Assembly (NCBI GenBank): GCA_977017575.1
Contig: CDRNVI010000066.1
Location: 248,001 to 312,000, forward strand
Length of the DNA stretch: 64,000 nucleotides
Direction of reading: 5' to 3'
Source of the DNA: Paramoeba atlantica
Lineage: Eukaryota > Protista > Discosea
Shown here: in pieces, positions 23,632 through 56,760 of the stretch
Position numbering within the stretch: the stretch's first letter is position 1
Layout of the letters: each line of letters opens with the position of its first letter
Position numbers and translations under genes: made by a program
The notes under the pieces: model-generated
The model's input: the letters and a program-made list of their open reading frames with translations, nothing else
Told to the model about the DNA's origin: nothing
Database searches by the model: none

Positions 23632-26180
23632 TATACCTAGTACCCACGCGTACACTACTCTGATATACTACTTCAATGCACACGACACCTGGCCACAGGG
23701 AAACACCAACAACAAAAAAGTGTCAAACATGTGAACAGTTTTTTTGCATATTGTAGTTCAAGAAATGTCTTTAAACAACAATGCATATGCTATGCGACGT
23801 AATTACTGGTCTGTTCTACGCACTATGTCATTTTATTTGTTCTTTAGACTGCTGTTTAACATTATTTTATTCCTCCGAGAAATTCTAATTGATGAGAGGA
23901 CGACCGCCCGTCGCAAACATACCAGTACGCATTCCGAGGCCTCCCCATCGGTCTTCCGCAATCCCTGAAAACCAAACTAATATAATTTCTTCCACCTCGC
24001 AAAGGAATGGACCCTCTTCTATGAACTCTCCTGGCAGCCGGAGCTCCCACGATGACATCCTATCTCAACATGCCAGTCATACCCCGGAGCCTGTACAAGA
24101 TACGGTCGATAGCACAGTGTGTCGGAGCTCTCGGATCAAAAGAGATCAACTTTCTGTACCTTGTTGTTGTTTTTATTTTTATTTTTACTCGTATGAACAC
24201 GCAAAACGCCGAACAAATTATGAAGAGGGGATCAACGCTCGATAAGCCAAAGAAAACCCCCCGTGTGAGAGTTATTATGAGTGCAAAGGAATTATCGCCG
24301 AACTGGGCCGACCACGAGGTACATAGCAACTACCGACGGCCAAGGATAAAATTTTCTGATGCAAGGCCGACCTCACAAGAGTCCGAGAATGATTCCGATG
24401 AGGAGAGAGATTCATCCAAACATCCTGAAGATTGCGAAGGCGCCTCCGATGATACCACAGGCGAAGAATCTGATGTGATGTCGGTGGATGAGGAAGTGAC
24501 GTCGATGGATGGGGAAGTGGGGCAACGCAAAAACGAAGAATTTCCGAAGGCTCCAGATCACATCAACACCATTATCCATGAATGGGGCAAAGGAACGACG
24601 TGCGAACTGAGATGGGGATTCAAAAAAGAGCAGAAATATGCCTCAAAAGGAGTAGTGGTGAAGAGGACTGTCCGAAAAGGTATTGTAAAGCTGAAGGTGG
24701 AATACAAGCCAAGCGACGGAGACAATGGACCCTCTGGTTTTATCTACCTTCCTCCATCTGCAAAAGTGAAAATTTGGTCCATTAAGGCACTGTGTCTAAA
24801 TAAAGTAAAAAACGTCGATGTGTCAATGGAAAACACTGGAAATTCAGAGAACAAGGAGGAGCGAGGCATTGAGGGAACATCTGATTTGGAACCGCTGCCA
24901 AAGATGGCACAAATTGATCCAACGTTTGCCGTCCATGTAATCGCGATTTTTCGTTCCATTATTAAAGCGTACCCGAAGGCTCAGACAGAAGCAGAAAGAA
25001 CTGTTATCTGGCACAAACTCCTCGATACACCACGGGACTCTTTGGCCACAATCCGTCTAAACTACCTACGTCGCCAGAGCTCCGTACAGCGTCGAGGGAG
25101 ACGTGAGTGGGAAACTATCGATACGAACATTACCGAGGAAGAACGACTTGTACAAGAAGTAGACAAACGATCAATTCGAAATGCATTGCAAGCAGCAAAG
25201 GCAGGAAATCTTGGAAAAGCTACCCGCATACTCGACAATGTTTACAAGGACTCTGCTCTTCCACTCTGGGAAAAGGTTGACAAACTTCGAGATCTACACC
25301 CCAAAGGCCCTACACCTCAAACTTCTGATCGAGACTTCCCGCGAATTGCGATATTGGAACCTTCTGAACTTCGTCTAGCGACTGAAAAATTGTCAAAAGG
25401 TGCAGCTCCTGGCCCGACAGGTCTGAGTGAAAGCATGATGCGAATTTTAGTGGAGGACGAAGAATCCTGCCTTTCACTCTGCCACATGCTGAGAGACGTC
25501 ATAAATGGGGAAGTTGCGAAAAGTGTCCGAGTAAGATTAACACGATGCAGAATGATAGCCCTTGCAAAACAATGGAATACGACCGGTTGCAATGGGGGAA
25601 ACGCTGCTAAAAATTTGCGGTTGTATCCTCCTTGAGCGCCATGCGAACTCCTTGTCAGACATATTCCAACCGATCCAAAGAGGCATATTACAAAAGAATG
25701 CATGTGAGTCCATTGTACATGAACTTTTGGAAGAGCATGAAGCTAGAGCCACAATTTTGACGATTGATTTCAAGAATGCATACAATACGCCACAACGTAC
25801 GGCAATAGAAGAAGCGCTCCTTCAATACCCGGTATTCAAACACTTTATGCGAATGTTCTATTTTGAATATGGTCAACCATCGGAACTTTAATTTTTCGCC
25901 AACGACTCATTACATTCCGTGATCGAAAGCTCGTCTGGGGTCCGTCAAGGATCAGCACTCTCTTCGGTTTATTTTTGCGCACTGCTACAAGGTCCTTTGA
26001 AAGAAATTGCGAAGCTCTATCCAGAGGTTACTATCAGAGCCTACCAGGACGATGTGACGATGAGCTCCAAAAATGAGTCGTCTTTGGAAGTTGCGTTCCT
26101 TCACCTCAAAGAACTAGCAAGTGGTCTGAATCTTGAAATTAATTCCCGTAAATGCGAAGTATTCCAAGGCAACAGTTCAA

Positions 26181-26491
26181 GGTAGACTATCATATGCTTT
26201 CATAATGTCTATATACGCAATATAGAGTGGTGTCCGATTTCTTTTTTAAGATTATTTTTGTTTTGCTTTCAGAACTAATAGCCCTTTCTTTTCTAAAGTC
26301 GCACCAACACTATCTCCAACGATGCTTCTCAGTGTCTCGTATGTTACCTCTCTTTTCTTATCTATTTACATCAGCTCCCCAAAAATGACCCAATTTTCTC
26401 AAGTCACTCCTTTAAAGGAGAAACCCAATCCGCTGCGGGTAAATGATGCCGCAGCTGTGTATAAATCGTATTATATTATATTATAAATCGT
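26181..26491 (-). mobile_element. 5'-truncated retrocopy of a CRE-family 3' end
   Basis: 7-bp TSD AGTTCAA (26174-26180 / 26492-26498); 26269-26470 is the reverse complement of ~60262-60460. Confidence 0.85.
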
Positions 26492-27516
26492 AGTTCAACG
26501 AATAATCGAGGGATGGATCTCAAGGAACTTGGGGTGGAAGACTGTGTGGATTCCATCAAGGTCCTAGGAGCATACATCGGGCATAATAAAGCCGTTGAAC
26601 GAAAGCTCTTGGAGAAGTTAGGGAAACATAAATGTTTATTTCGAAGACTTCGCGCTATGGGTCCCAGCAACTTGTCACTAGCGATTCTCAAGCGATGTAC
26701 CATACCCCGTCATGATTACCACCTTCGAGTCCACAAACCTGGAGCTTCGTTTCTTCTTGCCCAGGTGTTTGACGAGGAAATCCATGAGATCTTAAAGAAA
26801 TGGTGTGGTGCAGATAGTGAAGCACTTAAACTCTCTGCCCTCCCATGTAAAATGGGAGGTCTAGGAATCACCTCAACCGTTCTAAAGCAACGCTACTTTT
26901 TCGTCCCTAAAATCTATTGATGAGCGATCAAAACCCATTAATGCTCCGGTAGATAAGGGAGGCAAGAAACAAGCCGACAGCACACGAACGAATTCACAAG
27001 CTGCACGCATTCAGCTAAGAAAGAGCATGAAGAATGAACACGAGAAGACAGCAGCAGAATTGAATGCAATACCGAGATTCCAAAATATCATAAAGCGAAC
27101 GAAGGAGGCGAACAATCACTTAGATTCAACGTGCAACTACGTAAATCCATATCTTTTTCGTTACACTCTAATGATGCGCCTAGGAATTGCTCTAAGTAAT
27201 GTGTCAGGCGAGATTACATGCCCTGGATGTGGAACAATCGAAACATCAAGCAAAATCATTCCTCACGTAGCGGGATGTTCACGATGTGCTGGCATGAATT
27301 GCACGAGAAAACATTCTCATTTGGTACGCTATATTGCCGAAATGTGTTCCAAAGCTGGTCTTCCATGTGCGATCGAACCTCGTATTCATGCGTCCTTTTT
27401 TTGCACCAAATGCAAGTGCTCAATTTCCCCAGAAGAGGCGGAATACCATCCTTGCCGAGCGCGTCGAATTAGATCTGGCCCAGACCTAGCGATTATGTGG
27501 CCAGATGTTGGAGAAA

Positions 27517-28194
27517 TTTCTGTACCTTGTTGACTTTTTCTTTACTACTACTTTAAACTCTTTTATGTCAGTTCCTTCCTCGCGGGCGGCGCAACGTACG
27601 CCGTCGGAGAATCGGCAGACCACTGCAACTGTTAGGAGCACTGGCGTACAGGAGAACAACTTGAACTTCACCGAAGAAGCGAATAGACATGAGATTGGTT
27701 CATGGGACCAGTTCAAAGCCAACGACAAACTCATTAAAGCAACCAGCAACTACGACGAACTCAAGTACACGACCTCCATTCCACAACATATACCCCAGCA
27801 CTGGGCAGAGAAATCAGAGAAAGCCGCTCTCAGCATCGAGAAAAATCCAATCGCAGATACCGGCCAACACAAAGAGTACGGCGAAGAGGCTACTTTCGCG
27901 AGTGTTCAAAGAAACAAAAGCTCAGATCAAGCTCTATCAGACCCCTCCGCATTTAAAATAAAGATCAGAAAAGAAAATACCACACATAAAAACAAAATCC
28001 GCCGCCAAATGGCGGGGGCCGGTGGGTGGGTAACTCGTAGTACTTAGCAAAACTTGAAGACTACTATCAAAATATATAAAATATTTATTTCCATGTATCA
28101 CTATAGAAACTATTCATAAATAAAACGTACAATGCCCGTCGGCCAATTTTCATCACTATAAAGCCCCTCCTAAATTTTCTTCCGTGAACTTCTA
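27517..28194. mobile_element. Composite insert: SL-headed orphan ORF (+) fused to the inverted spacer/A2 end of a family-B VIPER-like element
   Basis: SL remnant 27517-27532, ATG 27565; 28030-28194 is the reverse complement of 52438-52601; 27998-28030 resembles the B-spacer at 37836-37870. Host RLE reads GEI|..DVTVVH across it. Confidence 0.75.
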
Positions 28195-29105
28195 ACGTTA
28201 CCGTGGTACATACGTGCTGCAGCAGCTATGCAAAGCAGAGCAGCAATGCCCTGCTGCAGAGTGCGGAAGAGCGGAAGATAGCAAAATATGTCAAAGAAAA
28301 AGGTCTTGATCCAGAATGCTTTCGCTGCATAGCTGTGACAGATTGTGGAGTACTACATGAAGAGACAAAAGTTTTGCTGAAAACATTGGCGAAAAGAAAT
28401 GATGTTGATTACAAGATTGTACGAGAAGCTTTTCAACTTGAACTGGAAAAATATTCAGCCTATGCAGTCGTCTCTCAATTGCGCCAATATATAGAAACCG
28501 AGAAATGGGTAGGAGGACTCCGTCTTTAAACACTCCTCTGAATATTACATTTTCGCTGCTTTTAACATTTCGTTAATAATGTTTCGTTGCTTTCAGCCTT
28601 TGGTGATTAATAATGTTTCGTTGCTTTCAGCCTTTGGTGATTACTGTTTCGCTGCTTGGTTAGGTTTCAGCCTTTGGTTATTTTTGTTTTGCTGCTTGGT
28701 GATTATTGTTCCGCAGCTTTCAGCTCTTGGTTGTTACTGTTTCGCTGCTTTGGGTTATCACCGTTTCGCTGCTTTGAGTCGTCACTTTTTCGCTGCTTTC
28801 AGCATTCGGCTATTACTATTTTGCTTTTTTGAGTAACATGTGAATAAATAAAGGAACGGAAAACACGTGAAACTATTATTTTGAGTGAATATAATATGTA
28901 ACGTAGCATGGGCCATTAAATATCTAAAGTATATCTCACGGATTTGATGGTGAAAACAAAATAATGCTTAATATCTTGTAACTCGTATAATGAAGCCTTG
29001 GGCTTCCAACAATTCTACGTCACTAGCTGGTAAAAATGATAGTTTACGGTAAGAAATTCAGGCGAGAGCTTATTACGTATAGTTTTAAAAAAAAAATCAA
29101 CTCGA

Positions 29106-31274: not shown

Positions 31275-34200
31275 TCTCTTCTTGTGACGTTACGCGGGAA
31301 TGGTACCTTTGAGGAAAAGCACTTTGAACTTGAATTCGATCAGGAACACATTTTGTGTCATGACGACTCCGTACCTGAAACATTCAACCCACAGGCATCA
31401 ACTTCACCAAACAGATGTGAAAACAACGACACGGTCTTGAACTGCGACACAATAGAGCTAATAAAAACTATCAACCCTACAACAGATTTTCCGATCCCAA
31501 GTCACGAAATATGGAATATTTCTCGATGTGATTTTTTTTAAACATAAACATAAACATAACCATAACCCTCTTGGTAACACAAGTTTACAATATGCGCCAA
31601 TTAGACTCGGCAACTATGTTAATCTCTGATCCTCAGTGTTGACGATGGTGGCTAAAATAGTTTCTCTTCCTCAGGACCAGATATCGTCATATACTGGAAT
31701 ACGGGAGCTGTTTTCTACGACTTAACTTTTTTTTTTTTATTAATTTGTTCTTTGTTACCCGGGTCGCGATCCCATGCCCACATCCGTTGAAGAGCAAAAT
31801 CCGACCTTCGAGGAGGAGGCGTCGTCTCACACACTTGGGTCCTGGGATCAATTTGCAGCAAACAAATCTTTGTGTCTATAGAAAATCCTTTTATAAATAA
31901 AATATCCTTTTTTTTTTGACGAAGGTAACTATATTTAGATATATTCGCCATCATTTGTGCAAAGGGGCGATTATTCGAAAATTTTGATTTTGCTAATTTT
32001 TTTTTCTAATTATGTAAAGGGAAGGGTGGTGGTCCAAAATTTTCGAGTTGCAAAGCATGCATTTTCCTGTCTGATTAAAAACGAGAGGGAGATCATCTCT
32101 TTTGGTCCACTGTCTGAACTTATATGGTGTATTGTTCTTCCTTGTCGGGAGTTAAATATTTTTGCATCCGCAAAGTAAAGCAAAAGCTTTATTAACTTTT
32201 GCAAAAAGTTTTAACTTATGGAAATTGTTTCTAATGTTTCTGTACCTTGTTGACTTTTTTTTACTATCTCTCTCACGCATTATGCAGCAGCGAGTGCTTG
32301 TCATCCACAGTGGAACTGTGCAGGATAATGACTCAGTCTTCACCTTCGGTTCGGCGAAAGAGCAGGTGTGTGATACGGAACAAAAATCTGTTTCGCAACC
32401 GCGCACGCGAAGAGGTGGACCCATCACAGTACAAACTTTGGACGACATTGGTTTTGGAAAACGTAAGAAAAAGCATCGCCGGCCAGTGTGGCGTCCGCTC
32501 GACCTTGATCCAACTAAAGAGGGAAATTCCACCGGTTCTGACAGTGAGAAACGTGAAATGCCACGCAAAGTGTCCAGGAGCCGCGTTCCGGATTCGCCGC
32601 AACCCAAAAGTTTGGGAAAAGCAGAGAAGCCGAGTGCGAAAACGAAAAGCCAAAATAAAGGGCAAAAAGGCGAGATTATGGGGAAGGAGGACGCGCAAAA
32701 GAAGGATCAACACTCATTCGAGAGCAAGAGTCTACAAAGCCCACCTCCCCCAGTAAATATACAAGACAACTGGACGAAACAAGGACGGGGCGTTTCCAAA
32801 CAAGAAAACAATGAAATATCCGAATCCAAGCACCAGACGCCCTCGACTGTGAAGGGACATAATCCACGAGAACGTGCGCCAGTTGAACACCTTGTACCTC
32901 AAGAACGCGATTCAGACATAGAGGCCGATGCTGAGTACTGTGACTCGTCGGAAGATAACGAAAATGCAGGAAACTCGCCCATAGCTCCCGACCACGTTCT
33001 TCGGAAAATCTCGGATTGGGGTAAAGGAACGACGTGTGCAGTACGGTGGTGTTTTCGAAACTCTCAGAATCGAATCTACGAATCGATTGGTGAAGTTGTT
33101 TCCAGAAAACTGCGAAAGAAAGCGTTGAACATCAAAATTTCGTACCATCCAGCCCCTGACGAAGCCGGGCCCTCTGGAAATCTTTATCTTCCCCAGTCGA
33201 CGAAAATCAAGGTTTTCGGCATCCGAGCAACTCATCTACGCCGTGTTCCAGATTGTGAAGTTTCAACGACGATATGCGCGGCAGAAGATGCGGACGACAC
33301 AGATCACGGGTGTGACCTAGAGCCTTTGCCTTCTTTCTCCCAGATCGATCCGACGTTTTCTGTGCATGTGGTAGCTATTTTCCGTTCGATCATAAGAGAC
33401 TATCCGAGACTTAAACTATCCTCAGAAAAAGATGCATTATGGCAAAAATTCCTCAACGCCCCACGAGACTCACTAGTAAGCGTGCGGAAAGCTATCCAAA
33501 GACGGGAAAGCATCCCGCATAGCCATAAGAGCGCCAATGCCAAGGAAAATGTATTTTTATCCAAAGAGGAGGTAAAGGAGCTCGAAGTTGACCGCCGCTC
33601 AATACGCAACGCTCTCCATGCAGCTCGTGCAGGAAATTTAAGTAAAGCAACCAGAGTCCTGGACAGCGTTTATGTAGACTCCCAACTCAACGTGGACGAA
33701 AAAGTGCGAAAATTGAAAGACCTTCATCCCACAGGTGATCCACCACCTGCGTCATCAGTAGAATACCCACGGGCTGGCGTAATCGAGATGGACGAGGTTC
33801 GCTCAGCGGTAAACAAACTCGCGCATGGAGCAGCCCCAGGCCCGACGGGATTGAGCGAAAACATCCTCCGCTTACTGGCTGATGACGTGGTATGTTGTTC
33901 AGGTTTGTGCCACATGATTAGAGATGTCATCAACGGAGAAATAAGCACATCAGTTCGCAACCGTCTGACACGTTGTAGAATCATCGCCTTAGCAAAGCCG
34001 AATAACGGGGTAAGACCGATAGCGATGGGTGACACAATGCTCAAAATAAGTGGCTCAATCCTGCTGCAACGTCATGAAGACTCGTTGAAAAGGTTCTTCC
34101 ACCCTATGCAACGTGGTGTCTTAGAAAAAAATGCATGTGAAGGAATCGTTCACGAGCTTCTTGATGACTACAGCAACGGACACACTATTCTTTCGGTAGA

Positions 34201-35004
34201 TTACACCAACGCATATAACACTGCACAGCGCTCAGCAATTGCTCAATCCCTACAGGCGCACAAAGTTTTCAAGCCGTTTATGCGCATGTTTTATTGCGAA
34301 TACGGAAATCCCTCGGACCTGCTCTTTTTTGCCAACAATCGACTACATTCTATACTTCAGAGCACTTCCGGAGCGCGGCAAGGCTCAGCTCTTTCCTCTC
34401 TGTATTTTTGTTCACTAATACAAGGTGCGTTGGTGGAAGTCTCTGATCTTTTTCCAGAAGTGAAAATTAGAGCATACATGGATGACGTTACATTGTCCTC
34501 AAAAAATCGCATCTCACTGGAAGCCGCGTTCTTACATCTCAGAGAGCTATCCACTGACCTTGGCCTGCACATAAATTATTCAAAATCAGAATGGTTCAAC
34601 GCTGAGAGCAGTAAGAATCGGAACAGTCATCCTGATGCTCTTCGCTCCCTAGGCGTCACCCATTCTGACAAGACAATCAAAATCCTTGGAGCCTACATCG
34701 GGGATCACCAAGAGGTCAGCTCACTTCTGGTCAAAAAACTAAAGAAGCACCAATGCCTGTTCCGTAGGCTTCGTCGAATGGGGCCCAGCAACATTTCACT
34801 GGCTGTACTGCAACGCTGTGCGCTCCCACGTCATGATTATCACCTGCGTGTACACCGTCCAGAAGACTCGCTTCTTATGGCCCAAAAATTTGATGAACAA
34901 GTTAATGATATTGTGTCGCACTGGTTCTTTGCTGATCCTATCTCTATCAAGCTATCGTCACTTCCACAACACCTAGGAGGACTTGGTTTGACACCGTCAA
35001 CATT

Positions 35005-35965
35005 GATGATGATGATGTATTGGGCCTTTTGACTCCGAAGAGTTATGGCCCCTCAACTCCCCAAACGGGCAGTCCGAATACGTCTTGCGACGTATCCGGA
35101 GAGCCAGCCATAGCAAGCTACGGCTGACCTCCGCTTGGAGAGGAGTTAGGTTACAGCTAGGGAGGTGGGGTGCGCTATACCCCTGCGTCTTAGGTAATGC
35201 AAATAAGGCGCCCCTTGACCAAAAAAAAACCACTCTATCTTTTGAGGGTGGATATAAAAAAAAACACATCACACATTCCAAAAATTTGACCGAATGGCAC
35301 CCACCCTAGTTTCTTAGTACCTTGTTATATATTCGGTACCGGGCGGTGCCACCCATTCTGCATTGTCGGAATGGCATCTACCCTAATTATTTAGTGCCTC
35401 GTTTTGCTGGCACCGGGTAGTGTCGTCCATATTGTTTTCATCGTGCTCACCCTAGCTATTTAGCGTCTTGTTATGCGACGCCGGGTGAGTTAGCTCGGGA
35501 GGCTGGGATCGCTAAGTCCCATCATCCGACATACAACGTAAGCCGGATGCCCTGACCTGGGGTGACTCAGAGGTTCCTATGCTTGACCCTTTTTGATTCT
35601 GACGGTCGTTCAACCTTTGGGTCACTTCCATCGTCATGGAGCGCAATATCTTCATTTCATTCCGTACTTCCGCATCACGTTTTCCAAACTCTTTTTGAAG
35701 ATTTTCTTGCGCAGTTGAAACTTTCTTTACGTCCGTACGAAATTCGGAAATCTGCTGTAATATTATCTGTAAAGTTTGATTAATGTTCGAATCTTCCCCC
35801 GTACCCACAGTAACGCTATCTCCACCACAAGGCTGAACCATAACAGGTTCTTCAGAGAGCGGGCCCGACTCAGGTGCAGCTTGAGACGAATCCGCCAGTT
35901 GAGAACGCGTTGAAACCATAAAATTTTTAAACTATGAGTAGTGAAAAAAGGCCAATCAACAAGGT
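35005..35965 (-). mobile_element. SL-headed retrocopy with (CAT)4 tail and 14-bp TSD
   Basis: TSD ACACCGTCAACATT (34991-35004 / 35966-35979); minus strand starts GTACCTTGTTG (35967-35957); ORF 35919-35512; 3' end CATCATCATCATC. Confidence 0.88.
35512..35919 (-). CDS. Orphan 135-aa ORF with predicted coiled coil (ORF1/gag N-terminus-like)
   Basis: ATG 38 nt after the SL remnant; heptad-like LQIILQQISEFRTDVKKVSTAQENLQKEF. Confidence 0.45.
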   Translation of the reverse strand: MVSTRSQLADSSQAAPESGPLSEEPVMVQPCGGDSVTVGTGEDSNINQTLQIILQQISEFRTDVKKVSTAQENLQKEFGKRDAEVRNEMKILRSMTMEVTQRLNDRQNQKGSSIGTSESPQVRASGLRCMSDDGT

Positions 35966-37128
35966 ACACCGTCAACATTAAAACATCGTTTCTTTTTCGA
36001 CACCGCGCGCAAATCGATTGATGAGCGAACACTATCCAATAAAGCTCCGGTAGTTTTGCGCAAGTCGAAAGGAGGCATTCCCGATGATAATGGAAGCTCA
36101 AGCCGTACAGCCAAGCATCAGACAGCCAGAATTCAAGCATCAAAAGCTATGAAGACGGAACAAAAACTATTAGCCACCGAGTTACGTAAGGATAGCAGAA
36201 TAGACTCCATACTAGAACGCACAACGACTGCCTTTCGACATCTTCCTTCAACTAGCGGATACGTTAATCCTTACCTTTTCAGATACGCTATCATGTTTAG
36301 ATTAGGCATCAAACCGCCTTCGTTGCCGGATCAAGTGAGTTGCCCTGGATGCGCTGCTCAGATAAAATCAGAGGAAATCCTTCACCACATTGTGGGTTGT
36401 ACAAAGTGTTCTGGAATGAACGCTACACGAAAACACTCATCTCTAGTGCGCTTTCTAGCCGAACTTTGCACAAAAGCAGGCCTCCAGTCCGTCATAGAAC
36501 CTCGCACTTATTCATCCTTCTATTGTACCAAGTGCAAGGCACACGTCTCCGCTGATGCGATTGATAACCATCCGTGCCGCGCACGAAGAATAAGGTCAGG
36601 CCCCGACCTCGGAATTATGTGGCCCCATATGGGTGAAGTACTTTACGACCTCACAGTTGTCCACACCGGTAGCCCAAGCTATCGAAAAATGACAGCTCAG
36701 CTCCTGCAAAATGCTATTGAGAGAAAACAGAAGAAATACGTTGAGAAGGGGGGGATTGATGAAGACTTTTTTCGCTGCATCTCCATGACAGAAGGAGGTT
36801 TCTTACACAGCCATACGAAAAATCTCCTTTCCTGTCTAGCAAAGAAAGCCGAACTTAAAGTCCCTGAAGTACTAGAAGCTTTTCAACTTGAGATTGAAAA
36901 GCTTAATGCATATACAATAGTTGCGCAACTGCGCGATTATCTACCCCGAGCATCGTGGCTGGGTTCACTGCAATCGTAAAGAATCCGTAAAGATTACGAA
37001 TTGGTTACGAATTTTCATTAACTGAAAGAAGAAATGATGTTTTATTTTATTATATTAAAGTTTAAACGTATGCGTCTGGCATACTCCAAATTCCTACAAA
37101 TGCACCACAAATATTTCCATCCATGACC

Positions 37129-42740: not shown

Positions 42741-43848
42741 TCGAAAACGTGTAGTACAGTAGTTAGAAATGGATAGCCTCTAAACAAATCAATAAAATGT
42801 TTTGTTACTACATTAAATGCTTTGATTATAAAGCAGAGCGTACAATGCCCGCCGGCCATATCAGCATATAATAGGAAAACATATATAGAAAAAAAGCCCT
42901 CGCCTAAATTTCTTACCGTAAACTTTTAGAGTCTTTTAGTGTCTTCATGGAGAAGCCCACAATCAGTCACCGCTAAGCATTTGAACGCCTCTGGTTCCAA
43001 ACCATTCTGTTCTACATACTTTTTATTTTTCCTGGCCAGTGCGTTTTCCATTAGTTGTTCAGGGGTGAACTTTGCATTTGACACCGTACAAGTATGTACA
43101 ACAGTTACATCATACAATATCTCTCCCTGGTGAGGCCACATTATTCCCAAGTCAGGACCAGAACGTATCCGACGCGCTCTACACGCATGTCGTTCAGCTG
43201 CATCTGCAGAAATACTTGCCTTGCACTTTGTGCAATAGAATGAAGCATGTACTCGAGGTTCGACCACGTGAGGGATCCCAGCCTTGGTGCATAAATCTGA
43301 AAGCAAACGGATCAGGTGTGTGTTTCTTCGTGGTGTTCATACCTGAACATTGTGCGCAGCCCGCAACATGATGAAGAAGGCCGTTTCCTTCTTGCTGTGA
43401 CCCGCATCCCGGACAATGACAAATCCCTGAGGCTTTCGGGAGTGATATCCCCAATCGCATCATTATGGAATATCGGAAAAGATGGGGATTGATGTAATCA
43501 TTAGTGGAGACCAAGTGTGAATTCGAGTCCTTTGTTCTGCTAATGACTTCACTTAATCGCTACAAACTACAAGGTGACAATTGTAATTTTCCTATACACG
43601 TATTAATCACATATGCTCTTCGGGCATATGACGCGGCAATGAAGGCAAGAACTTGCGTACTGCTTGACCCTTGGTACCGCGTTGAATATCGATGGTGAAA
43701 AATTGAGCTGAAAATGGCTAATTGTAAGATTGTTCTGGTTTGCTTGTGCTCGTTTGTACACGTTTTCTCCTAATTGCAAAAGAGGATAGGTCTCCTACCT
43801 CCATTCGCATAATCCGCGGTTTGGCCTATTCGTGATGTGGATAGATGT

Positions 43849-46816
43849 TTTCTGTACCTTGTTGAATATTTTTCGTTAAACGGTTAACTAATATGTCATC
43901 TCCTCAAGTGAGCGAGCTGATACACAACGATCGAGGAATGAATAAATCACTTTGTGTCAAAAGTAAACCAAAGAAGTTGCGTCGAATCAAAGTGATTAAC
44001 AGCGCAAAAGAGCTCTCAACGACATGGGCAGATCACGAGAATTACGATTTCCCTCCACGACACAAAATTAAGATTAGGAAATCACCAAGTTCAGACTGAG
44101 ACTCTGGCTCGGGCGGTATCTCACCTCCAGATGAACTTCCTTCTGAGGATGAACATACCAGTGCGATGTCAACGGATGGCGATGACCAGGAGGTAATACA
44201 AGAACAGGTATTTTCCAAATCTCCGGATCGTGTGTACGAAATTATCAAAGAATGGGGAAAAGGAAGCACATGTGAAATCCGTTGGGGATTCAACGAGAAA
44301 CAAGTATACGATAGCGTAGGGACGGTGACTAAGAGAACTGTACGTCGAGGGGCGGTAAAGCTCAGAATATCATACAAACCAAAAGATGCTAGTGAAGGTC
44401 CTTCAGGTTTTATCTATCTACCGCAATCTACGAAAATCAAGATTTGGTCAATACGTGAAACGAAAGTCAACAGAATCAAATCTTTAGGGGAGGCTATCGA
44501 ATCTATCGAAGAAAAGCAAAATGAAGCATCCGAATCGATAGAAGTGAGTCGTGATTTAGACCCTCTTCCAAGATTCGCGCAGATCGATCCCTCTTTTTCG
44601 GTGCACGTTGTTGCAATATTTCGTTCGATCGTTAGCGCATATCCGAAAGCCAAAACAGAGTCTGAAAAAACAATTATATGGCACAAACTGTTAAATGCGC
44701 CCCGAGATTCCTTGGCTTCGATTCATCAAAATCTCATTCGGCGCCATAGTTCAGCGAAAACACATAAGAAAGCCGGAATTGACGAGCAGAACTCAAACCT
44801 AAGCGAGAAGGAGCGCTTGGAACAAGACATCGATAGACGTTCAATCAGAAGTGCTTTGCAGGCGGGAAAAGCAAATAACGTTAGAAAGGCCACGCGCATT
44901 TTAGATAACGTATATCGAGAATCCTACCTTACTGCAGAAGAAAAATCTCGGGAACTGAAGAGACTACATCCTAACGGACCTTCCCCGCAAGGTACTGACC
45001 AAGAACTTCCTCGGATCGCAGTAGTGGAAAATTTAGAAGTGCGCCTAGCCACCGAAAAATTATCTCGAGGTGCGTCACCTGGCCCCACTGGATTCAGTGA
45101 AAGTATGCTTCGCCTCTTGGCCGAGGACGAGGAATCGTGCCTCTCCTTGTGTCACATGTTCCGAGATGTAATAAATGGTGAAGTGTCACAATGCGTTCGC
45201 ACGCGCCTTACGCGATGCAGAATGATAGCTTTGGCGAAGCCAAACAATGACATAAGACCTGTAGCGATGGGGGAAACTATTCTTAAGGTCTGTGGTTCTA
45301 TTCTTCTCCAGCGTCACGAATGTGCACTGAAATCTCTCTTCCAGCCGATTCAACGTGGTATTCTACAAAAAAGCGCATGTGAATCAATCGTTCATGAGTT
45401 GATTTCTGAATACGAAGCTGGTAGCACGATTCTCACCGTAGATTTCAAGAACGCATATAACACACCACACCGCACAGCTATTGAACAAGCCCTATTCCAG
45501 TACCCCGTCTTCAAGCACTTCTTGAGAATATTTTATCTAGAATATGGACAGCCATCGGATCTCCTTTTCTTTGCCAATAGCTCACTGTACTCTACAATCG
45601 AAAGTTCATCTGGATTTCGGCAAGGATCAGCATTATCCTCTCTGTATTTTTGCACTTTGCTACAAGGAGCTTTGAAGGAAGTCGCGGATGCGTATCCAGA
45701 AGTCACCTTACGAGCTTATCAGGATGACGTCACAATGAGTTCCAAAAATGAAGCCTCTCTAGAAGTAGCTTTCAAACATTTTCAAGAGCTTACAAAGGAC
45801 CTGAACCTGGAAATAAACTTCCACAAGTGTGAAATCTTTCAAGGATCAAAAGCACAACACTGTAAAGTTTCAGCACTTCGAGAACTGGGAGTTCAGGATT
45901 GCGTGGATACGATCAAAGTGCTTGGAGGCTACATAGGCAGCAATAAAGCAGTCGAACGGAAGCTCCTGGAAAAATTAGAAAAACACAATTGTTTATTCCG
46001 AAGACTCGGTTGCATGGGGCCAAGCAATTTGTCACTTGCTATTCTCAAGCGGTGCACGTTGCCGCGCCACGATTACCACTTGCGAGTGCATAAACCAGGC
46101 GCATCGCTCTCGTTGGCGCAAGAATTCGATAAAGAGATTCGAGGTGTTTTAAAGAGATGGTGTGGGGCGGACGACGACGCTTTGTCATTAGATTCGCTCC
46201 CTTGCAAAATGGGGGGAATAGGCATAACTTCCACGATCCTGAAACATCGTTTCCTTTTCGACCTTTCTCGCAATTCTATTGATGAGCATGTCAAAACCAT
46301 TGAAGCTCCGGTAGAATCAGAGGAAAAACGAAAAGCTAACAAGAACTCAGGGTCGCAGGGAGCGCGCACCAGCATGAAAAAAATGATGAAAAGTGAACAT
46401 GAAAAAGTAGCCGCAGAGCTGAGCGGGAATCCTCGATTCGGGAACATCATGAAAAGATCGCAAGAGTCAAATTACCATCTATTCTCGACCAGCAACTATG
46501 TGAATCCTTACCTATTTAAACAAACCCTCACGATGCGTCTAGCGATAAGACTGGAGAATGCCCCAGAAACCGTTTCGTGCCCAGGATGTGGAACCATTGA
46601 ATCACCGAGCAATATTATTCCACATGTGGCCGGCTGTTCGCGATGTGCAGGAATGAATAGCACAAGGAAACACTCACACATCGTACGGTATTTATCTAAC
46701 TTGTGTGCCAAAGCAGGGCTGCCATGCGCCATTGAGCCTCGTCTTTATTCATCCTTTTTCTGTACAAAGTGCAAATGTTCAATCTCACCCGACGCCGCAG
46801 AAAGACACCCATGTCG
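43849..46816 (+). mobile_element. CRE-clade retrotransposon (copy 3), broken in the RLE region
   Basis: SL remnant 43849-43864, ATG 43893, frameshift near 44095, RT ORF 44166-46816; breaks at HPCR into 18-bp repeats (46817-46861). Confidence 0.9.
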
Positions 46817-47009
46817 CAATAAGGAAAGGTCTTACAGTAAGGAAAGGTCTTACAATAAGGAATTTTTTTTTTCAAATTAGCAATTCTTTTTCTTTCCACA
46901 GATGTATCTTTTTTCTCAGCCCAAAACTAGCAATTTAATCTCCTCTAAGTACATACTACAAATAAGAAAAACAGTAAAAATTAAAACAAGCAATCCATTC
47001 CCAATCCAT

Positions 47010-48098: not shown

Positions 48099-48215
48099 TT
48101 CGTATGATTGGGAGAAATCGTGGGCCGCGATCGCGTAGCTGATGTCTCGTTGGCGTGGAATCTTCTTTTCTTTTCCTGTACCTTGTTGAAAACAAACTGT
48201 ACCTTGTTGACTACC

Positions 48216-48608
48216 ATGATCCTTTTAAATGCCACATCGTCGGAAGATTCGCGTTTTCGTCCGCGATTCAAGGCAATTGGCCGTCGAAGAGAAAAGGAAT
48301 CGAGTGTGACGCGCGTCTGCAAAAACGTCGCGTGCTTGTTGAAAGTACGAAGTGATACTTTTCATCTGGAAGGTTTGTTGATGAGCACGGTTAACCCATT
48401 TACGCTCCGGCAAACTGGAAAGATGGAGAGTGTTGCGGAATGCTTTCAACGGGCACGTGATGAGATTGTGTATTCTGGAGTGGCGGGAAGTGAGACTTCT
48501 TGTCTCGGAGGTTTGTTGATGAGCACGGATAACCCCTTTACGCTCCGGCAAACTGAAGAGACAAGAGGTATCACTCCTGCTGCTGCAGGGTGCACGTCTC
48601 TTGCGTGA
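48216..48608 (+). other. Orphan ORF preceded by two stacked SL remnants
   Basis: CTGTACCTTGTTG at 48176-48188 and 48197-48209, ATG 48216; internal ~46-bp duplication. No recognisable domain. Confidence 0.45.
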
Positions 48609-52129: not shown

Positions 52130-52437
52130 TTTTTCAACGCTATGAGAATACCCTGGAGCCACTTTTTGCGCCAATACAGCAGGGGATAATGTCAAAAGCG
52201 GGCTGCGAGAGGATAGTGCACACCCTTCACGAAAAATATTTGACAGGCCACTCCATCCTATCCGTAGACTTGAAAAATGCGTTCAACACCCCCTCCAGGA
52301 ATGACGTCGCAAAGCATGTTTTCGGTATCGCAACGTTCCGACCCTTCCAAAGGTATTTTGCGGCTGAATATTCCGAGCAATCTCAGCTTCCCTTCTACGG
52401 CAGCGAAGGTAAATTGGTCGACACAGTATCAAGTTCC
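52130..52437 (+). pseudogene. RT fragment of the second CRE-like family
   Basis: FAPIQQGIMSKAGCERIVH, SVDLKNAFNT; ends abruptly at the VIPER A repeat. Confidence 0.8.
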
Positions 52438-53146
52438 TAGAAGTTCACGGAAGGAAATTTAGGAGGGGCTTTATAGTGATGAAAATTGGCCGACGGGCAT
52501 TGTACGTTTTATTTATGAATAGTTTCTATAGTGATACATGGAAATAAATATTTTATATATTTTGATAGTAGTCTTCAAGTTTTGCTAAGTACTACGAGTT
52601 ACGATAAAGATACAGTTTCTGTACCTTGTTGTCTTCAAGTTTTGCTAAGTACTACGAGTTATGTCTGGTATCGTTGATGCGGTGCGACGGGCGGTGTCGA
52701 TGACACGAGCTGAAAGTCCGCCTCCCGTCGCTCCTGATCCTCCTGCATCTCGACGTCGAGGGCCACGACGCGAGCGCAGGGATGGAACGCTGAATCCCGA
52801 GCAGGTGGAAGACCGCGAGACCCGTGTAATGACTGATGTCGAAAAAGGAGAGTTCCAAGCTCGAATAGTTGATATTTTGCGAGCGAAGCGAAAGGTTAGG
52901 ATCAAGGCTGTGTGGGCGGAGCAGGGGGATGGTTTTCAGCAGGTCGTCGAAGGGTCAGTCTCTTTTAAGTTCCCCAAAAAACGAAACAATGATGAGTTGG
53001 TTGCAAAGTGGGATGACGAACCTAACAAAAGCTACCCTTTTCCTCATCCGCGAATTCGATATTTTGCCCTTGAGATCGTGCAGGTTGATAGCTGTATGCC
53101 GGACGGTATTGAAGACGGTTCCCTCGCGGCTCAGCAGGCGCAGATC
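52438..53146 (+). mobile_element. 5' end of family-B VIPER-like element: A repeat + SL + duplicated 5' UTR + gag N-terminus
   Basis: A repeat 52438-52601, SL 52601-52631, repeated 29-nt UTR 52632-52660, ATG 52661 (MSGIVDAVRRAVS..TLNPEQVE). Confidence 0.88.
52601..52631 (+). other. Spliced-leader exon copy (31 nt, 5'-truncated)
   Basis: ACGATAAAGATACAGTTTCTGTACCTTGTTG, identical to 56438-56468; shares GATACAGTTTCTGTAC with trypanosomatid/bodonid SLs; joined at the AG acceptor seen at 52570-52571. Confidence 0.85.
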
Positions 53147-53795
53147 AAGAACGCATATAACACACCACACCGCACAGCTATTGAACAAGCCCTATTCCAG
53201 TACCCCGTCTTCAAGCACTTCTTGAGAATATTTTATCTAGAATATGGACAGCCATCGGATCTCCTTTTCTTTGCCAATAGCTCACTGTACTCTACAATCG
53301 AAAGTTCATCTGGATTTCGGCAAGGATCAGCATTATCCTCTCTGTATTTTTGCACTTTGCTACAAGGAGCTTTGAAGGAAGTCGCGGATGCGTATCCAGA
53401 AGTCACCTGACGAGCTTATCAGGATGATGTCACAATGAGTTCCAAAAATGAAGCCTCTCTAGAAGTAGCTTTCAAACATTTTCAAGAGCTTACAAAGGAC
53501 CTGAACCTGGAAATAAACTTCCACAAGTGTGAAATCTTTCAAGGATCAAAAGCACAACACTGTAAAGTTTCAGCACTTCGAGAACTGGGAGTTCAGGATT
53601 GCGTGGATACGATCAAAGTGCTTGGAGGCTACATAGGCAGCAATAAAGCAGTCGAACGGAAGCTCCTGGAAAAATTAGAAAAACACAATTGTTTATTCCG
53701 AAGACTCGGTTGCATGGGGCCAAGCAATTTGTCACTTGCTATTCTCAAGCGGTGCACGTTGCCGCGCCACGATTACCACTTGCGAGTGCATAAAC
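53147..53795 (+). mobile_element. Internal CRE RT segment, near-identical to ~45447-46095
   Basis: Same sequence apart from TTA>TGA at ~53408 and one silent change; fused in frame to the gag upstream. Confidence 0.9.
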
Positions 53796-54278
53796 CCCCT
53801 TTTTGTTTATTACCCCCTTTTTGTTTATTACCCCCTTTTTGTTTATTACCCCCTTTTTGTTTATTACCCCCTTTTTGTTTATTACCCCCTTTTTGTTTAT
53901 TACCCCCTTTTTGTTTATTACCCCCTTTTTGTTTATTACCCCCTTTTTGTTTATTACCCCCTTTTTGTTTATTACCCCCTTTTTGTTTATTACCCCCTTT
54001 TTGTTTATTACCCCCTTTTTGTTTATTACCCCCTTTTTGTTTATTACCCCCTTTTTGTTTATTACCCCCTTTTTGTTTATTACCCCCTTTTTGTTTATTA
54101 CCCCCTTTTTGTTTATTACCCCCTTTTTGTTTATTACCCCCTTTTTGTTTATTACCCCCTTTTTGTTTATTACCCCCTTTTTGTTTATTACCCCCTTTTT
54201 GTTTATTACCCCCTTTTTGTTTATTACCTCCTTTTTGTTTATTACCCCCTTTTTGTTTATTACCCCCTTTTTGTTTAT
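53793..54278. repeat. 18-bp minisatellite ACCCCCTTTTTGTTTATT, ~27 copies
   Basis: Nearly perfect tandem array. Confidence 0.97.
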
Positions 54279-54957
54279 CCTAACTGGGTCGCCACTGCCA
54301 CGGCATATCCTTTTGGGTGCGTCAGAAGGGGAAGATGAGGTCAGGAGCCCGGCATTGGACCGTTGCCGGTGATGGGGCGTGGCGACCCCAGCCTTCCGAC
54401 GTAAGGGTTTCCGAGCTGGCAGGAGGGAATGTGTCCGTTCCTATTCCTGTTCAACCCTTGTTCGCGGCGTCGTTAACCGCGTTCCGGGGCATAGACGGGG
54501 TAGCATCCCGTCGCCGAGGCATGTATGTCGTTAGCGAGCGCGCTAACCCTACCCCCTCGGTGGAGGTGGAACGGCATTGGTGCTAGCTGAGGTTTTATCC
54601 CTCCCCATCTCCCGGAAAAGCGAAGGGACTAGATCCTTTTTTCTAGGCTAGGTCCTTCGTTTCTCCACGCTAGGAGCGCTCCTGGACTAACAATCCGGAG
54701 CAGTGGAGTTTTTAGCGAGTGAGCTACCAGAGTCTCTGACGCAATCCGAGATTCAACAAAACTCTGGTAAGCAAGTCTCGCACTACCCTGTAATGGGGTG
54801 TCTCCCCTGAGGTGCGTGGGTGGAAACACCCATTCATCTTGCCACTGGAAGGTGGCCAGCTCACTCGACCAAGAAAAGCCTGCCGGTTGGACACCGGGTG
54901 GCGGTCGAGGCGGTTGAGGCAAAGATTTTCTCCATGTACGAAAAAAAAAAAAAAAAA
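54279..54957. other. GC-rich structured non-coding segment ending in A17 (possible non-autonomous retroelement)
   Basis: Long stems such as CTGGGTCGCCAC / GTGGCGACCCCAG and GTTAGCG/CGCTAAC; no convincing ORF; orientation uncertain. Confidence 0.4.
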
Positions 54958-55574
54958 CGTTTTATTTATGAATAGTTTCTATAGTGATACATGGAAATAA
55001 ATATTTTATATATTTTGATAGTAGTCTTCAAGTTTTGCTAAGTACTACGAGTTACCTTCTTAATCGGTGCCCGTGGATCGGATACAAGGAGGTCAGCTTA
55101 CCTATCAAGACGCGTGCCATGCTGGCAGAATGGCGCAACGAGATTCTGAACAACGTTCCCATAGTTCCATCACCTCATCCTGACATGGCGCCGCATCAGC
55201 ATCGTCTTTATACGGATGCCTCAGCAAAGGGCTGGGGTGCTATTTTGTATCTTGATCAAGGCGAGGTCTTGATTGCCGGAGGTCCGTGGGAAAGAGGCAC
55301 TGAGTACGAGGTTAATCATGCGGAGGCAAAAGCAGTCCGCTTCGCGCTTGAAAAATTTGCGGAACATTTTCCACGAGGAACCTGCCTGGATCTATTCGTG
55401 GACAATACGTCCTGTGAGGCAGCGGTTAACCGACGTATGACCTCTTCGACAAATATTGCTCATGAATTAGAACAAGTTCATACACATTGCAAATCTCTGG
55501 GAATATGTGTACAAGCGCGATATATTCGCTCAGAAGATAACCCCGCTGATCCGATCAGCCGAATGGAAATGTGA
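54957..55574 (+). mobile_element. Deletion derivative of family-B VIPER: partial A repeat fused to RNase H
   Basis: 54957-55055 matches ~52507-52602; then LYTDASAKGWG, NHAEAKA, FVDNTS, NPADPISR. Confidence 0.85.
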
Positions 55575-56079
55575 GTTAAGATTCGGATTACGCATTTATG
55601 GAAGTGCAACAATAATAACTTAAATTGAAAAATAAAACAGTGCATACGTTTTTCGTCCGTAAGAGGAATTGGCCCTTCGTCTGTACGGTTATTTGATTCT
55701 GTTAGCAATACTACATATTGGATACTAGTGTTTGGGTGCAGTGACGTGTGCTTGGGTTCGGTTGGCGGCGGATCCGGACGGAAAACCCGTTCACTTAGTA
55801 TCATCTACAAACAATATAGTTTTTGATTTTCTCATGATATTTCTAGACAAGCGCTTATTTTTCATAGTTTGATTTGAAGGAAGAAGGTACGAAATTGTAT
55901 ATTTCATAGTACGGTTTTCACATCTACAAGAATTTAAGTAGGTTCATATTTCAGATTTTAGAAGTTGTATTTCAATGAAGTAGGTGCCCCGACGTGAATT
56001 TCCAACTAGAAATCGAGAAATTTGCAGCTTACACTGTCGTATCACAATTACGACAATACATCTCAGCAGAACAATGGCT

Positions 56080-56272
56080 AGGAGGCCTCAGCCATTGAAA
56101 AATAAAGTTCACAAAAAGAACCCTTGTCAAGACCGCTTATTTTCCTCTGCGTAAAGTGGCAACTAAAAGAACATAGGAGGCCTCAGCCATTGAAAAATAA
56201 AGTTCGCAAAAAGAAACCGTGTCAAGACCACTTATTTTCTCTGCGTAAAGTGGCAACTAAAAGAACATACCG
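56080..56272. repeat. ~96-bp tandem duplication
   Basis: AGGAGGCCTCAGCCATTGAAAAATAAAGTTC...GGCAACTAAAAGAACATA occurs twice with a few mismatches. Confidence 0.85.
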
Positions 56273-56437
56273 CAAAATAATAATAGTGAGAGATACAACA
56301 ACGCCTAAAGTCCAAAACAATCATGCGGTAAATCATTATAAGTTTACGATAAGAAATTTAGGAGACTTTATTTTGTTGATATGCAGATGGTGCCCCGAAA
56401 GGGGTCTAAACTGTTTTCAAATTCTAACGATTCTTTA

Positions 56438-56760
56438 ACGATAAAGATACAGTTTCTGTACCTTGTTGTGACATTTCCTCCTATAAACAACAAAAACGTT
56501 TTTCCATGGCAGGTATTTTGAATACCGTGCGCCGAACACTCTCTATGGGCAGACAGGACAGTCCTCCACCAGTTGATCCTAACGACCCTGTGAGCCCATC
56601 TCTCCGACAAGGACGGGACCAGAGAAACACCCTGAACCCCGAGCAAGTGGCGGCTTTGCTTCGAGGTGGGGATGGCGCGGAGGCCATGTCAGAGGAATCG
56701 AAGATGGAGTTTGCTGCAAAAGTTAAATCTTTAGTAGCTCGAGGGTACCAGGTATCTGTT
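56438..56760 (+). mobile_element. SL-headed gag 5' fragment of a third VIPER-like family
   Basis: SL 56438-56468, 37-nt UTR, ATG 56506 (MAGILNTVRRTLS..TLNPEQVAALL..EFAAKV); cut by the minisatellite. Confidence 0.85.

What the first reader, a model, noticed from the sequence alone, without database searches (positions are those of the whole stretch)
24151..56468. Retroelements across classes carry spliced-leader remnants at their 5' ends: transposition through trans-spliced mRNA
Seen: nine copies of the SL 3' end at eight loci (24151, 27517, 32237, 35967 minus, 43849, 48176+48197, 52601, 56438). Each locus lies 6-45 nt before an ATG, none is followed by GT, and none precedes the three host genes. 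They head three long CRE copies, two VIPER gag genes and three orphan ORFs. Established: kinetoplastid mRNAs all receive an SL by trans-splicing, and SL relics mark retroposed mRNA in dinoflagellates. Inference: these elements use host trans-splicing to define their RNA 5' end instead of an internal promoter or ribozyme, and copy part of the SL into each new insertion.
Basis: partly seen in the sequence, partly recalled or inferred. Interest (0 to 1): 0.9.

Follow-up and report, generated by a model that had tools for sequence, protein, structure and literature searches.

The report
Retroelements headed by spliced-leader relics
In this free-living kinetoplastid-type genome, jumping genes of several kinds begin with a DNA copy of the cell's own spliced leader, which shows that they were copied back into DNA from trans-spliced messenger RNA.

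Summary
The 13-mer CTGTACCTTGTTG occurs 9 times at 8 loci in 64 kb, against 0.04 expected. It is the 3' end of the real 38-nt spliced leader (SL): SL RNA genes lie in 5S-linked arrays with a GTATGAGAAGCT intron. None of the window copies is followed by GT. All lie 6-37 nt before an ATG.

Genome-wide there are 963 copies of the last 16 nt but only about 38 SL genes. The first ATG behind a relic opens an ORF of at least 100 aa in 65% of cases, against 9% at random positions.

The core reading, retroposition of trans-spliced element mRNA, is well supported:
- Relics end exactly at the exon boundary.
- In two element families an unspliced duplicate shows an AG exactly at the junction.
- One window relic heads an insertion flanked by a 14-bp target-site duplication. 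Another heads an insertion absent from a paralogous copy.
- Copies 99% identical have different junctions.
- Fourteen sites carry an SL end fused to a 16-nt relic, the sign of re-splicing at the SL's internal AG.
- SL genes are not interrupted.

Corrections: the "orphan" at 27517 is a CRE-like fragment. Canonical recombinase-element copies lack the relic. Relic length (full or about 16 nt) depends on the element lineage and is unexplained. No RNA data were available. Earlier notes of this scan reported the same phenomenon on other DNA of this genome.

The parts
24151..24166 (+). 16-nt SL relic heading CRE-like copy 1. The ORF runs 24193-25635. The body runs to 27516 and resumes at 28200-28525.
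   Evidence: the ORF groups with other 16-nt-relic lineages in the tree
27517..28199 (+). Insertion inside the ORF of CRE-like copy 1. It holds a 16-nt relic (13 nt plus TTT shared with the target), a 32-nt UTR and a 160-aa N-terminal fragment of another CRE-like family. This is followed by an inverted copy of the recombinase-element A repeat (28030-28194).
   Evidence: The paralogous uninterrupted copy is continuous at 50596/50608. The ORF joins the CRE-like cluster.
32237..36973 (+). CRE-like copy headed by a 16-nt relic (32237-32252). The 916-aa ORF with RVT_1 runs 32282-35032. The copy is interrupted at 35005-35965 and its RT continues at 35966-36973.
35005..35965 (-). 961-bp non-autonomous retro-insertion flanked by a 14-bp TSD, ACACCGTCAACATT, at 34991-35004 and 35966-35979. 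Its 5' end is a 9-12-nt SL relic (35957-35965, up to 35968 by microhomology). It then has a 37-nt UTR, a 135-aa ORF (35919-35515) and a (CAT)n tail.
43849..46817 (+). Young CRE-like copy, 99% identical to L048/L049/L050: 16-nt relic (43849-43864), filler AATA, then the element. It is truncated at its 3' end at 46817.
   Evidence: Full-length relative L048 has a 1117-aa ORF with RT, a CCHC motif and a PD..D-V-T motif. The best PDB match is R2.
48176..48608 (+). Tandem relics (13 nt, spacer AAAACAAA, 13 nt) followed 6 nt later by a 130-aa ORF. The same ORF family is found behind relics at 5 other loci.
52434..55055 (+). Aberrant chimeric copy of a gag-YR-RT/RH element. In order: A repeat 52434-52600 with AG at 52570-52571; 31-nt SL relic 52601-52631; duplicated 29-nt UTR 52632-52660; gag 5' part 52661-53144; CRE fragment 53145-53796; another element's 3' region with A17 up to 54956; last 99 nt of the A repeat at 54957-55055.
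56433..56778 (+). 36-nt SL relic (56433-56468), a 37-nt UTR and a 90-aa gag-like ORF, 42% identical to the gag at 42740-42501(-).
37600..42930 (-). Control: an intact VIPER/TATE-like element with split direct repeats (A1 42930-42740, B1 38303-38058, A2 38059-37870, B2 37845-37600), a gag with zf-CCHC and an 886-aa pol. It has no SL relic.

Best explanation
The motif is a DNA copy of the 3' part, or genome-wide often the whole, of the host's 38-nt spliced leader. It was written into the genome when retroelement mRNAs that had already been trans-spliced were reverse transcribed up to or near their 5' ends and integrated. Shown: the relics are SL exon sequence ending exactly at the exon boundary; they sit at the 5' terminus of insertions; and the junction coincides with an AG acceptor where an unspliced copy is available for comparison. 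Inferred: RLE-type (R2/CRE-like) LINEs copy their own SL-capped mRNA by target-primed reverse transcription at dispersed sites, not in SL genes. Short non-autonomous elements are copied the same way. The recombinase (VIPER/TATE-like) elements occasionally fix the SL when the cDNA made from the spliced RNA end is retained next to the A repeat. Relic-bearing copies that are transcribed again can be re-spliced upstream of the relic or at its internal CAG. This gives tandem relics. How much of the SL is kept (about 38 nt or about 16-18 nt) is a property of the element lineage. I guess that reverse transcription is blocked, or second-strand priming occurs, at SL nt 16-23. This last step is speculative.
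For: SL identity: 39 SL introns, 38 behind an intact exon end and 30 with the exact 38-nt exon. The genes lie in tandem arrays linked to 5S rRNA. The CAGTTTCTGTAC core is the kinetoplastid SL core (PMC3795323).
Excess: 963 copies of the 16-mer, 0 in the reversed control.
Exon-boundary precision: none of the window copies, and only about 189 of the 963, are followed by GT. Most of those belong to a repeat family starting GTACATTTT, not to SL genes.
AG acceptor: canonical copies of the recombinase element read ..GATAGTAG|TCTTCAAG..GAGTT ATG. The window copy has the SL relic joined exactly at that AG. A second family (L011/L100) shows ..AGACAG|ACTTTTC.. in the unspliced duplicate.
Insert termini: a 14-bp TSD encloses the relic at 35005-35965. 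An empty-site comparison exists for 27517-28199.
Independent acquisition: copies 99% identical carry different flanks and different junction fillers.
Recycling: 14 dispersed sites have an SL end fused directly to the 16-nt relic, and tandem relics with spacers occur at 48176/48197 and in about 12 of 60 sampled loci.
Coding context: ORF of at least 100 aa behind the relic in 65% of cases against 9% at random. 34 of about 50 such ORFs belong to one CRE/R2-like superfamily.
Against: There is no RNA evidence: the only candidate RNA run held nothing, and the other runs are contigs of unknown kind. A relic ends in TG, so a relic-bearing parent cannot be re-spliced at the same junction. How single-relic daughters keep arising is therefore not explained, and no relic-less master copy was found for the 43849 family. 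Junction fillers of 4-14 nt that are not nested (AATA, CCTAT, AATTAAATATATAA) look more like non-templated addition at a template jump than like alternative AG sites. TSDs were not found for the long CRE-like copies.
Confidence: 0.78

Rival explanations
1. The SL piece is not spliced onto the element RNA. Instead it is added during reverse transcription: the R2-like RT reaches the element RNA's 5' end, adds a few untemplated bases and jumps end-to-end onto another RNA whose 3' end is the SL exon end (the free SL exon of the trans-splicing reaction), or by homology onto other SL-bearing RNAs.
For: Copies 99% identical have variable, non-nested fillers between the SL and the element. Partial 5' SL duplications and an inverted SL fragment abut some relics: L017, L021, L085, L090/L091. 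poly(A)-SL38 junctions look like head-to-tail jumps. End-to-end jumping is known for R2 RT (my own knowledge, not tested here).
Against: In two families the junction falls exactly behind an AG, which a polymerase jump would not respect. The free SL exon is a rare intermediate. All kinetoplastid mRNAs need the SL to be translated, so element mRNAs should carry it anyway.
Confidence: 0.1
2. In the short-relic lineages the 16 nt are a fixed, vertically inherited 5' leader from one old capture. They are not re-acquired, and the RNA 5' end is made by something else, such as an internal promoter or RNA processing.
For: Relic length is lineage-specific: 2 changes on the ORF tree against 6.3 in shuffles. 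The 16-mer is identical across diverged families.
Against: Junctions and fillers differ among copies 99% identical. Relic length varies 16/18 within one 99.6%-identical family, L087 against L062-L066. Outer and inner tandem relics exist. No ribozyme family and no pairing partner for the 16-mer were found.
Confidence: 0.08
3. DNA-level origin, as in SLACS/CZAR/CRE: the elements insert into SL RNA genes or relics, or are co-transcribed from SL gene promoters, and the SL pieces are target sequence or target-site duplications.
For: The known CRE clade always inserts in SL RNA genes (PMC12278014). The elements here have the same RT plus RLE build.
Against: 38 of 39 SL introns follow an intact exon end. 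No SL 5' half is followed by anything other than the 3' half. No 16-mer lies at the 3' flanks of young copies. Relics lie inside the TSD at 35005-35965 and at the insert end at 27517 within a non-SL target.
Confidence: 0.03
4. Assembly artefact: cDNA reads or chimeric contigs.
For: None specific. Runs X1-X4 all come from one study.
Against: Relics lie in long contigs with unique flanks, TSDs and nested insertions. Contigs from several runs cover the 43849 junction region and a variant junction. An ENA assembly record shows the same arrangement, though it may be the same organism.
Confidence: 0.01

Closest known systems
Relict spliced leaders of retroposed genes in dinoflagellates (e.g. PMC5585692, PMC12014239)
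   Same: A DNA-encoded SL remnant lies at the 5' end of retrocopies. Tandem relics arise by re-splicing at an AG inside the SL. The relic serves as a tag of RNA-mediated duplication.
   Different: Here the tagged units are overwhelmingly retrotransposons themselves, not host genes: none of about 50 sampled relic-headed ORFs showed a host-type Pfam domain. The organism is a kinetoplastid-type euglenozoan. Full 38-nt relics are common, and relic length depends on the element lineage.
CRE clade LINEs (SLACS, CZAR, CRE1/2) of trypanosomatids (PMC12278014)
   Same: A single long ORF with RT and a C-terminal CCHC plus PD..D restriction-like endonuclease motif, and an association with SL sequence.
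   Different: Known CRE elements sit at a fixed position inside SL RNA genes, and the SL sequence next to them is target DNA. Here SL genes are intact, the elements are dispersed, and the SL piece is the exon's 3' end fused to the element's own 5' UTR, meaning it is RNA-derived.
R2 and L1Tc 5'-end definition (co-transcription plus HDV-like ribozyme; Pr77 promoter, PMC1874656)
   Same: An RLE- or APE-type LINE has to create a defined RNA 5' end inside a host transcription unit.
   Different: No ribozyme family was detected at the 5' ends. The 5' end carries the host SL, which implies host trans-splicing rather than self-cleavage or an internal promoter giving unspliced RNA.
VIPER/TATE tyrosine-recombinase retroelements (PMC6681497, PMC12278014)
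   Same: gag-like ORF with a zinc knuckle, a middle ORF with recombinase-like features, RT/RH, and split direct repeats A1...B1 A2 B2 (L082 and window 37600-42930).
   Different: Some copies carry the SL plus a duplicated 5' UTR right after repeat A. I did not find this feature reported for VIPER/TATE in the papers searched.

Membership tests
SL-relic retrocopies (dinoflagellate type) | The relic equals the SL exon, ends at the exon boundary and is not followed by the SL intron. | tested here: met
SL-relic retrocopies (dinoflagellate type) | The relic lies at the 5' terminus of an insertion that bears marks of retroposition. | tested here: met
   14-bp TSD around 35005-35965; empty-site comparison for 27517-28199. 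Not shown for the long copies.
SL-relic retrocopies (dinoflagellate type) | Tandem relics from re-splicing at an AG inside the SL. | tested here: met
   14 sites with ..CCTTGTTG directly followed by TTTCTGTACCTTGTTG; L076
SL-relic retrocopies (dinoflagellate type) | The same leader is present on mRNA 5' ends. | not testable with these tools
   No RNA run held the sequence. Only SL gene structure supports it.
CRE clade (SLACS/CZAR/CRE) | RT plus a C-terminal restriction-like endonuclease with a CCHC motif. | tested here: met
   RVT_1, best PDB hits R2 proteins. CPGC..H..C and PD..YDVTV motifs were read in the L048 ORF. There was no significant sequence hit to a solved RLE domain.
CRE clade (SLACS/CZAR/CRE) | Insertion at a fixed position inside SL RNA genes. 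| tested here: not met
   the flanks of copies are unrelated
CRE clade (SLACS/CZAR/CRE) | Phylogenetic placement within the CRE clade. | not tested
   The homologue search returned only unnamed proteins of one ENA source. The atlas gave only generic RVT_1 clusters.
VIPER/TATE (YR retroelements) | gag-like, tyrosine recombinase and RT/RH ORFs. | tested here: inconclusive
   gag zf-CCHC E=7e-7. The RT/RH hits are below Pfam cut-offs. The recombinase is supported only by language-model features, 0.97 to Phage_integrase clusters, with no PDB hit.
VIPER/TATE (YR retroelements) | Split direct repeats A1 ... B1 A2 B2. | tested here: met
   L082 and window 37600-42930
HDV-like ribozyme 5' ends (R2/L1Tc type) | A self-cleaving ribozyme at the element's 5' end. 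| tested here: inconclusive
   No Rfam hit at gathering score in the window or at E<=1 in 43700-48700. The 16-mer pairs no better than shuffled versions. Such ribozymes are hard to find by sequence.

The most novel reading that the evidence does not exclude
The host spliced leader has become a working cis-element of the retrotransposition machinery. In several CRE-like lineages the element's ribonucleoprotein recognises, or is stopped by, the cap-proximal 22 nt of the SL, in analogy with the 5' RNA-binding site of R2. Alternatively it uses the purine-rich nt 8-22 as a second-strand primer. Either way every new copy would start near SL nt 21-23, while a sister clade copies the SL to its capped end.
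Probability: 0.15. Interest if true: 0.85.

Novelty: new variant of a known kind. Interest (0 to 1): 0.6.

Why it matters
It gives a genomic record that retrotransposons of a kinetoplastid-type protist use ordinary trans-spliced, SL-capped mRNAs as transposition intermediates. This is a third way for LINEs to obtain a 5' end inside polycistronic units, beside ribozymes and internal promoters. It also shows relatives of the SL-gene-specific CRE elements living dispersed in the genome. The relics are a built-in tag for full-length retrocopies, for rounds of recycling and for splice-acceptor use. Their lineage-specific length points to a testable difference in how the reverse transcriptases deal with the capped SL end. 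I found no description of SL relics on euglenozoan retroelements in the searchable literature. The absence of a paper in that library is not proof of novelty.

Tried and rejected
1. The 16-nt relic as the downstream half of an SL split by a site-specific insertion. Rejected: no orphan 5' halves, and the upstream flanks are unrelated.
2. The 16-mer as a target-site duplication. Rejected: it is absent at the 3' flanks of L048/L049/L050.
3. Master copies at the exon/intron boundary of SL genes. Rejected: 38 of 39 introns follow an intact exon.
4. A ribozyme or structure involving the 16-mer. Duplex energies equal those of shuffled controls, and Rfam is negative.
5. RNA-seq check. The look-up of sequencing runs gave four runs of unknown kind from one study and one possible RNA run with no match. 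Read laying returned only contigs, so it says nothing about 5' ends.
6. TSD search for the other window loci: none of 10 nt or more.
7. Naming the LINE clade. The homologue search and atlas search gave unnamed RT clusters only.
8. Search for host retrogenes behind relics. No host-type Pfam domain appeared in 26 tested ORFs. Most ORFs were cut at about 500 aa by locus length, so this is weak.
9. The SL sequence as a literature search term: no paper.
Full report
**Observation**

The chance expectation is 0.04, and no shuffle reached nine. The 9-mer ACCTTGTTG occurs nowhere else in the 64 kb. None of the copies is followed by GT. The first ATG lies 6-37 nt downstream. The three recognisable host genes have no copy nearby: ATP-grasp/SET, an RNase T-type exonuclease and an amino-acid transporter fragment.

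**Is it the spliced leader?**

The window is G000:C66:248001-312000 of a 45.7-Mb assembly. The genome holds 39 copies of an intron start GTATGAGAAGCTTCGAAC. Of these, 38 follow ..CCTTGTTG directly and 30 follow the exact 38-nt exon AACTTTAACGATAAAGATACAGTTTCTGTACCTTGTTG. They stand in tandem arrays on contigs C97 and C107 with a period of about 2.56 kb, and on C3, C11 and C74. In locus L006 they alternate with 5S rRNA genes. The CAGTTTCTGTAC core and the GTATGAGAAGC intron start are those of kinetoplastid SL RNAs (PMC3795323, and my own knowledge). I could not confirm the leader on RNA. The only possible RNA run held nothing, and the other runs are contigs of unknown kind.

**Genome-wide picture**

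The last 16 nt of the SL occur 963 times, with none in the reversed control. About 189 copies are followed by GT, but only 38 of those are SL genes. The rest belong to a dispersed non-coding family whose body starts GTACATTTT and whose relic is mostly 28 nt.

In an unbiased sample of 49 relics, 35 have 34-38 nt, 9 have 16-18 nt, and the few others have 22-31 nt. 114 relics are exactly 16 nt long, and at least 332 reach nt 5 of the SL.

Among 40 distinct sampled relics the first ATG lies a median of 31 nt downstream. It opens an ORF of at least 100 aa in 65% of cases, against 9% for random positions.

**What the relics head**

By BLAST clustering, 34 of about 50 relic-headed ORFs form one superfamily. 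It includes those at 24151, 27517, 32237 and 43849.
- These are LINEs of the restriction-like-endonuclease type. They carry RVT_1, and the best solved relatives are R2 proteins.
- A full-length relative (L048) has a single 1117-aa ORF with a CCHC motif followed by a PD...YDVTV motif.
- Clade membership (CRE proper) was not tested.
- The "orphan ORF" at 27517 is therefore a CRE-like N-terminal fragment.
- The ORF at 48216 belongs to a family found behind relics at five other loci.
- The ORF at 35919(-) sits in a 961-bp non-autonomous element.

The ORFs at 52661 and 56506 are gag-like.
- The canonical relative of the first (L082) has a gag with a zinc knuckle, a 303-aa middle ORF and an RT/RNase H ORF. 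The middle ORF's language-model features match tyrosine recombinases (0.97).
- It also has split direct repeats A1...B1 A2 B2. This is the VIPER/TATE build (PMC12278014).

**Evidence that the relics come from trans-spliced RNA**

1. All relics stop exactly at the exon boundary. Only splicing defines that boundary.
2. Four copies of the recombinase element, 98-99% identical, read ...GATAGTAG|TCTTCAAG...GAGTT ATG with no SL. The window copy has, right after GAGTT, 31 nt of SL followed by a second copy of the 29-nt TCTTCAAG...GAGTT. The SL is therefore joined exactly behind that AG.
3. A second, unrelated family (L011/L100) shows the same layout, with ...AGACAG|ACTTTTC... in the unspliced duplicate.
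4. The relic at 35967(-) lies inside a 14-bp target-site duplication (34991-35004 and 35966-35979) that bounds a 961-bp insertion in the RT gene of the 32237 element.
5. The 27517 relic is the first base of a 683-bp insertion that interrupts the 24151 element. A paralogous copy is continuous at that point.
6. Five copies of the 43849 family, 98-99% identical, have different flanks and three different junctions: SL16 plus AATA, CCTAT or AATTAAATATATAA. The 5' ends were therefore formed independently.
7. Fourteen dispersed sites carry ..CCTTGTTG fused directly to TTTCTGTACCTTGTTG. This is the product expected when a relic is re-spliced at its internal CAG. Tandem relics with short spacers occur at 48176/48197 and in about a fifth of sampled loci.

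**DNA-level alternatives fail**

- SL genes are not interrupted.
- No SL 5' half lacks its 3' half.
- Young copies have no 16-mer at their 3' flank.
- Flanks upstream of 16-nt relics are unrelated to each other.

**What remains unclear**

A relic ends in TG, so a relic-bearing parent cannot be spliced again at the same junction. No relic-less master copy was found for the small 43849 family. The non-nested fillers resemble untemplated additions at a template jump. I therefore keep a 10% rival in which the RT acquires the SL by jumping.

Relic length is lineage-specific. On an ORF tree, six full-relic rows form one clade with 100/99 support. The seventh full-relic row, L022, sits apart on a very long branch, and all other clades stop at SL nt 21-23. 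That is two changes on the tree against 6.3 in shuffles. Half of the rows were chosen for having 16-nt relics, but the unbiased rows show no exception.

Within one 99.6%-identical family the relic is 16 or 18 nt long. This argues for a stop zone, not a fixed inherited leader. The 16-mer has no pairing partner downstream, and no Rfam ribozyme is present. My guess is a block to reverse transcription, or a priming event, at SL nt 16-23. It is untested.

**Limits of the "across classes" claim**

Canonical recombinase-element copies lack the relic. The intact element at 37600-42930(-) lacks it too, as does the APE-type LINE fragment at 58410-60323. The 52601 copy is a chimera: its gag 5' part is fused at 53145 to a CRE fragment 99.7% identical to 45445-46096. 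Beyond that lies another element's 3' end with an A17 run.

**Comparison and novelty**

SL relics on retrocopies are established in dinoflagellates (PMC5585692, PMC12014239). CRE-clade elements are known as residents of SL genes (PMC12278014). L1Tc uses an internal promoter that gives unspliced RNA (PMC1874656). I found no report of SL relics on euglenozoan retroelements. Earlier notes of this scan describe the same phenomenon on other pieces of this genome. My tests agree with them.

**Verdict**

The core interpretation is well supported, though indirectly. It is a new variant of a known kind.

Noticed in passing
window 37600-42930 (-): An apparently intact VIPER/TATE-like element with split direct repeats (A1, B1, A2, B2), a gag with zf-CCHC and an 886-aa pol ORF. 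It has no SL relic.
   Followed up: partly
window 46872-47223 and 38587-38775; L015, L017, L018, L027, L030: A very abundant repeat ending in poly(A), with word depth of 26,000-80,000 in the run contigs. In five sampled loci it lies directly upstream of full-length SL relics. This is either a preferred landing site (A-runs) or head-to-tail template jumps.
   Followed up: partly
G000 genome-wide; L001-L005, L008-L010: About 150 dispersed copies of a non-coding family whose body starts GTACATTTT and contains CCCGGAAACGGGC. It is headed by a mostly 28-nt SL relic. Because of the GT it can be mistaken for an SL gene.
   Followed up: partly
G000, first 100 places: In near-full relics nt 3-4 read CT almost always. 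Nt 2 reads T in about 60, A in about 26 and C in about 10 of 100, although 30 of 38 SL genes read AACT. This may be misreading of modified cap-proximal bases. Many of the copies are related by descent, so the counts are not independent events.
   Followed up: partly
L090, L091 (G000:C2:544521-546371 and 552939-554789): An inverted SL fragment (complement of nt 17-32) abuts the 5' end of a 36-nt relic. It looks like a snap-back product of cDNA synthesis.
   Followed up: no
window 22070-23634: A Tc1/mariner-type DNA transposon: a DDE_3 transposase ORF at 22273-23403(-) flanked by roughly 105-bp inverted repeats.
   Followed up: no
window 27565-28044; L016, L036: The N-terminal parts of CRE-like ORFs repeatedly give sub-threshold matches to the LsmAD domain (E 0.001-0.009).
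   Followed up: no
window 58410-60323 (+) and 56761-58395: A LINE ORF with an Exo_endo_phos (APE-type) endonuclease and no SL relic. It is preceded by long tandem repeats of 18-bp units.
   Followed up: no
window 62001-64000: G+C falls to 26% with strong negative GC skew. A 461-bp direct repeat lies at 62279-62739 and 63540-64000.
   Followed up: no
window 35005-35500; L028, L051, L068: The 3' 500 nt of the 961-bp TSD-flanked insertion is a module shared at 94-98% identity with other loci, and it ends in (CAT)n instead of poly(A). It may be the 3' recognition module of a LINE partner.
   Followed up: partly
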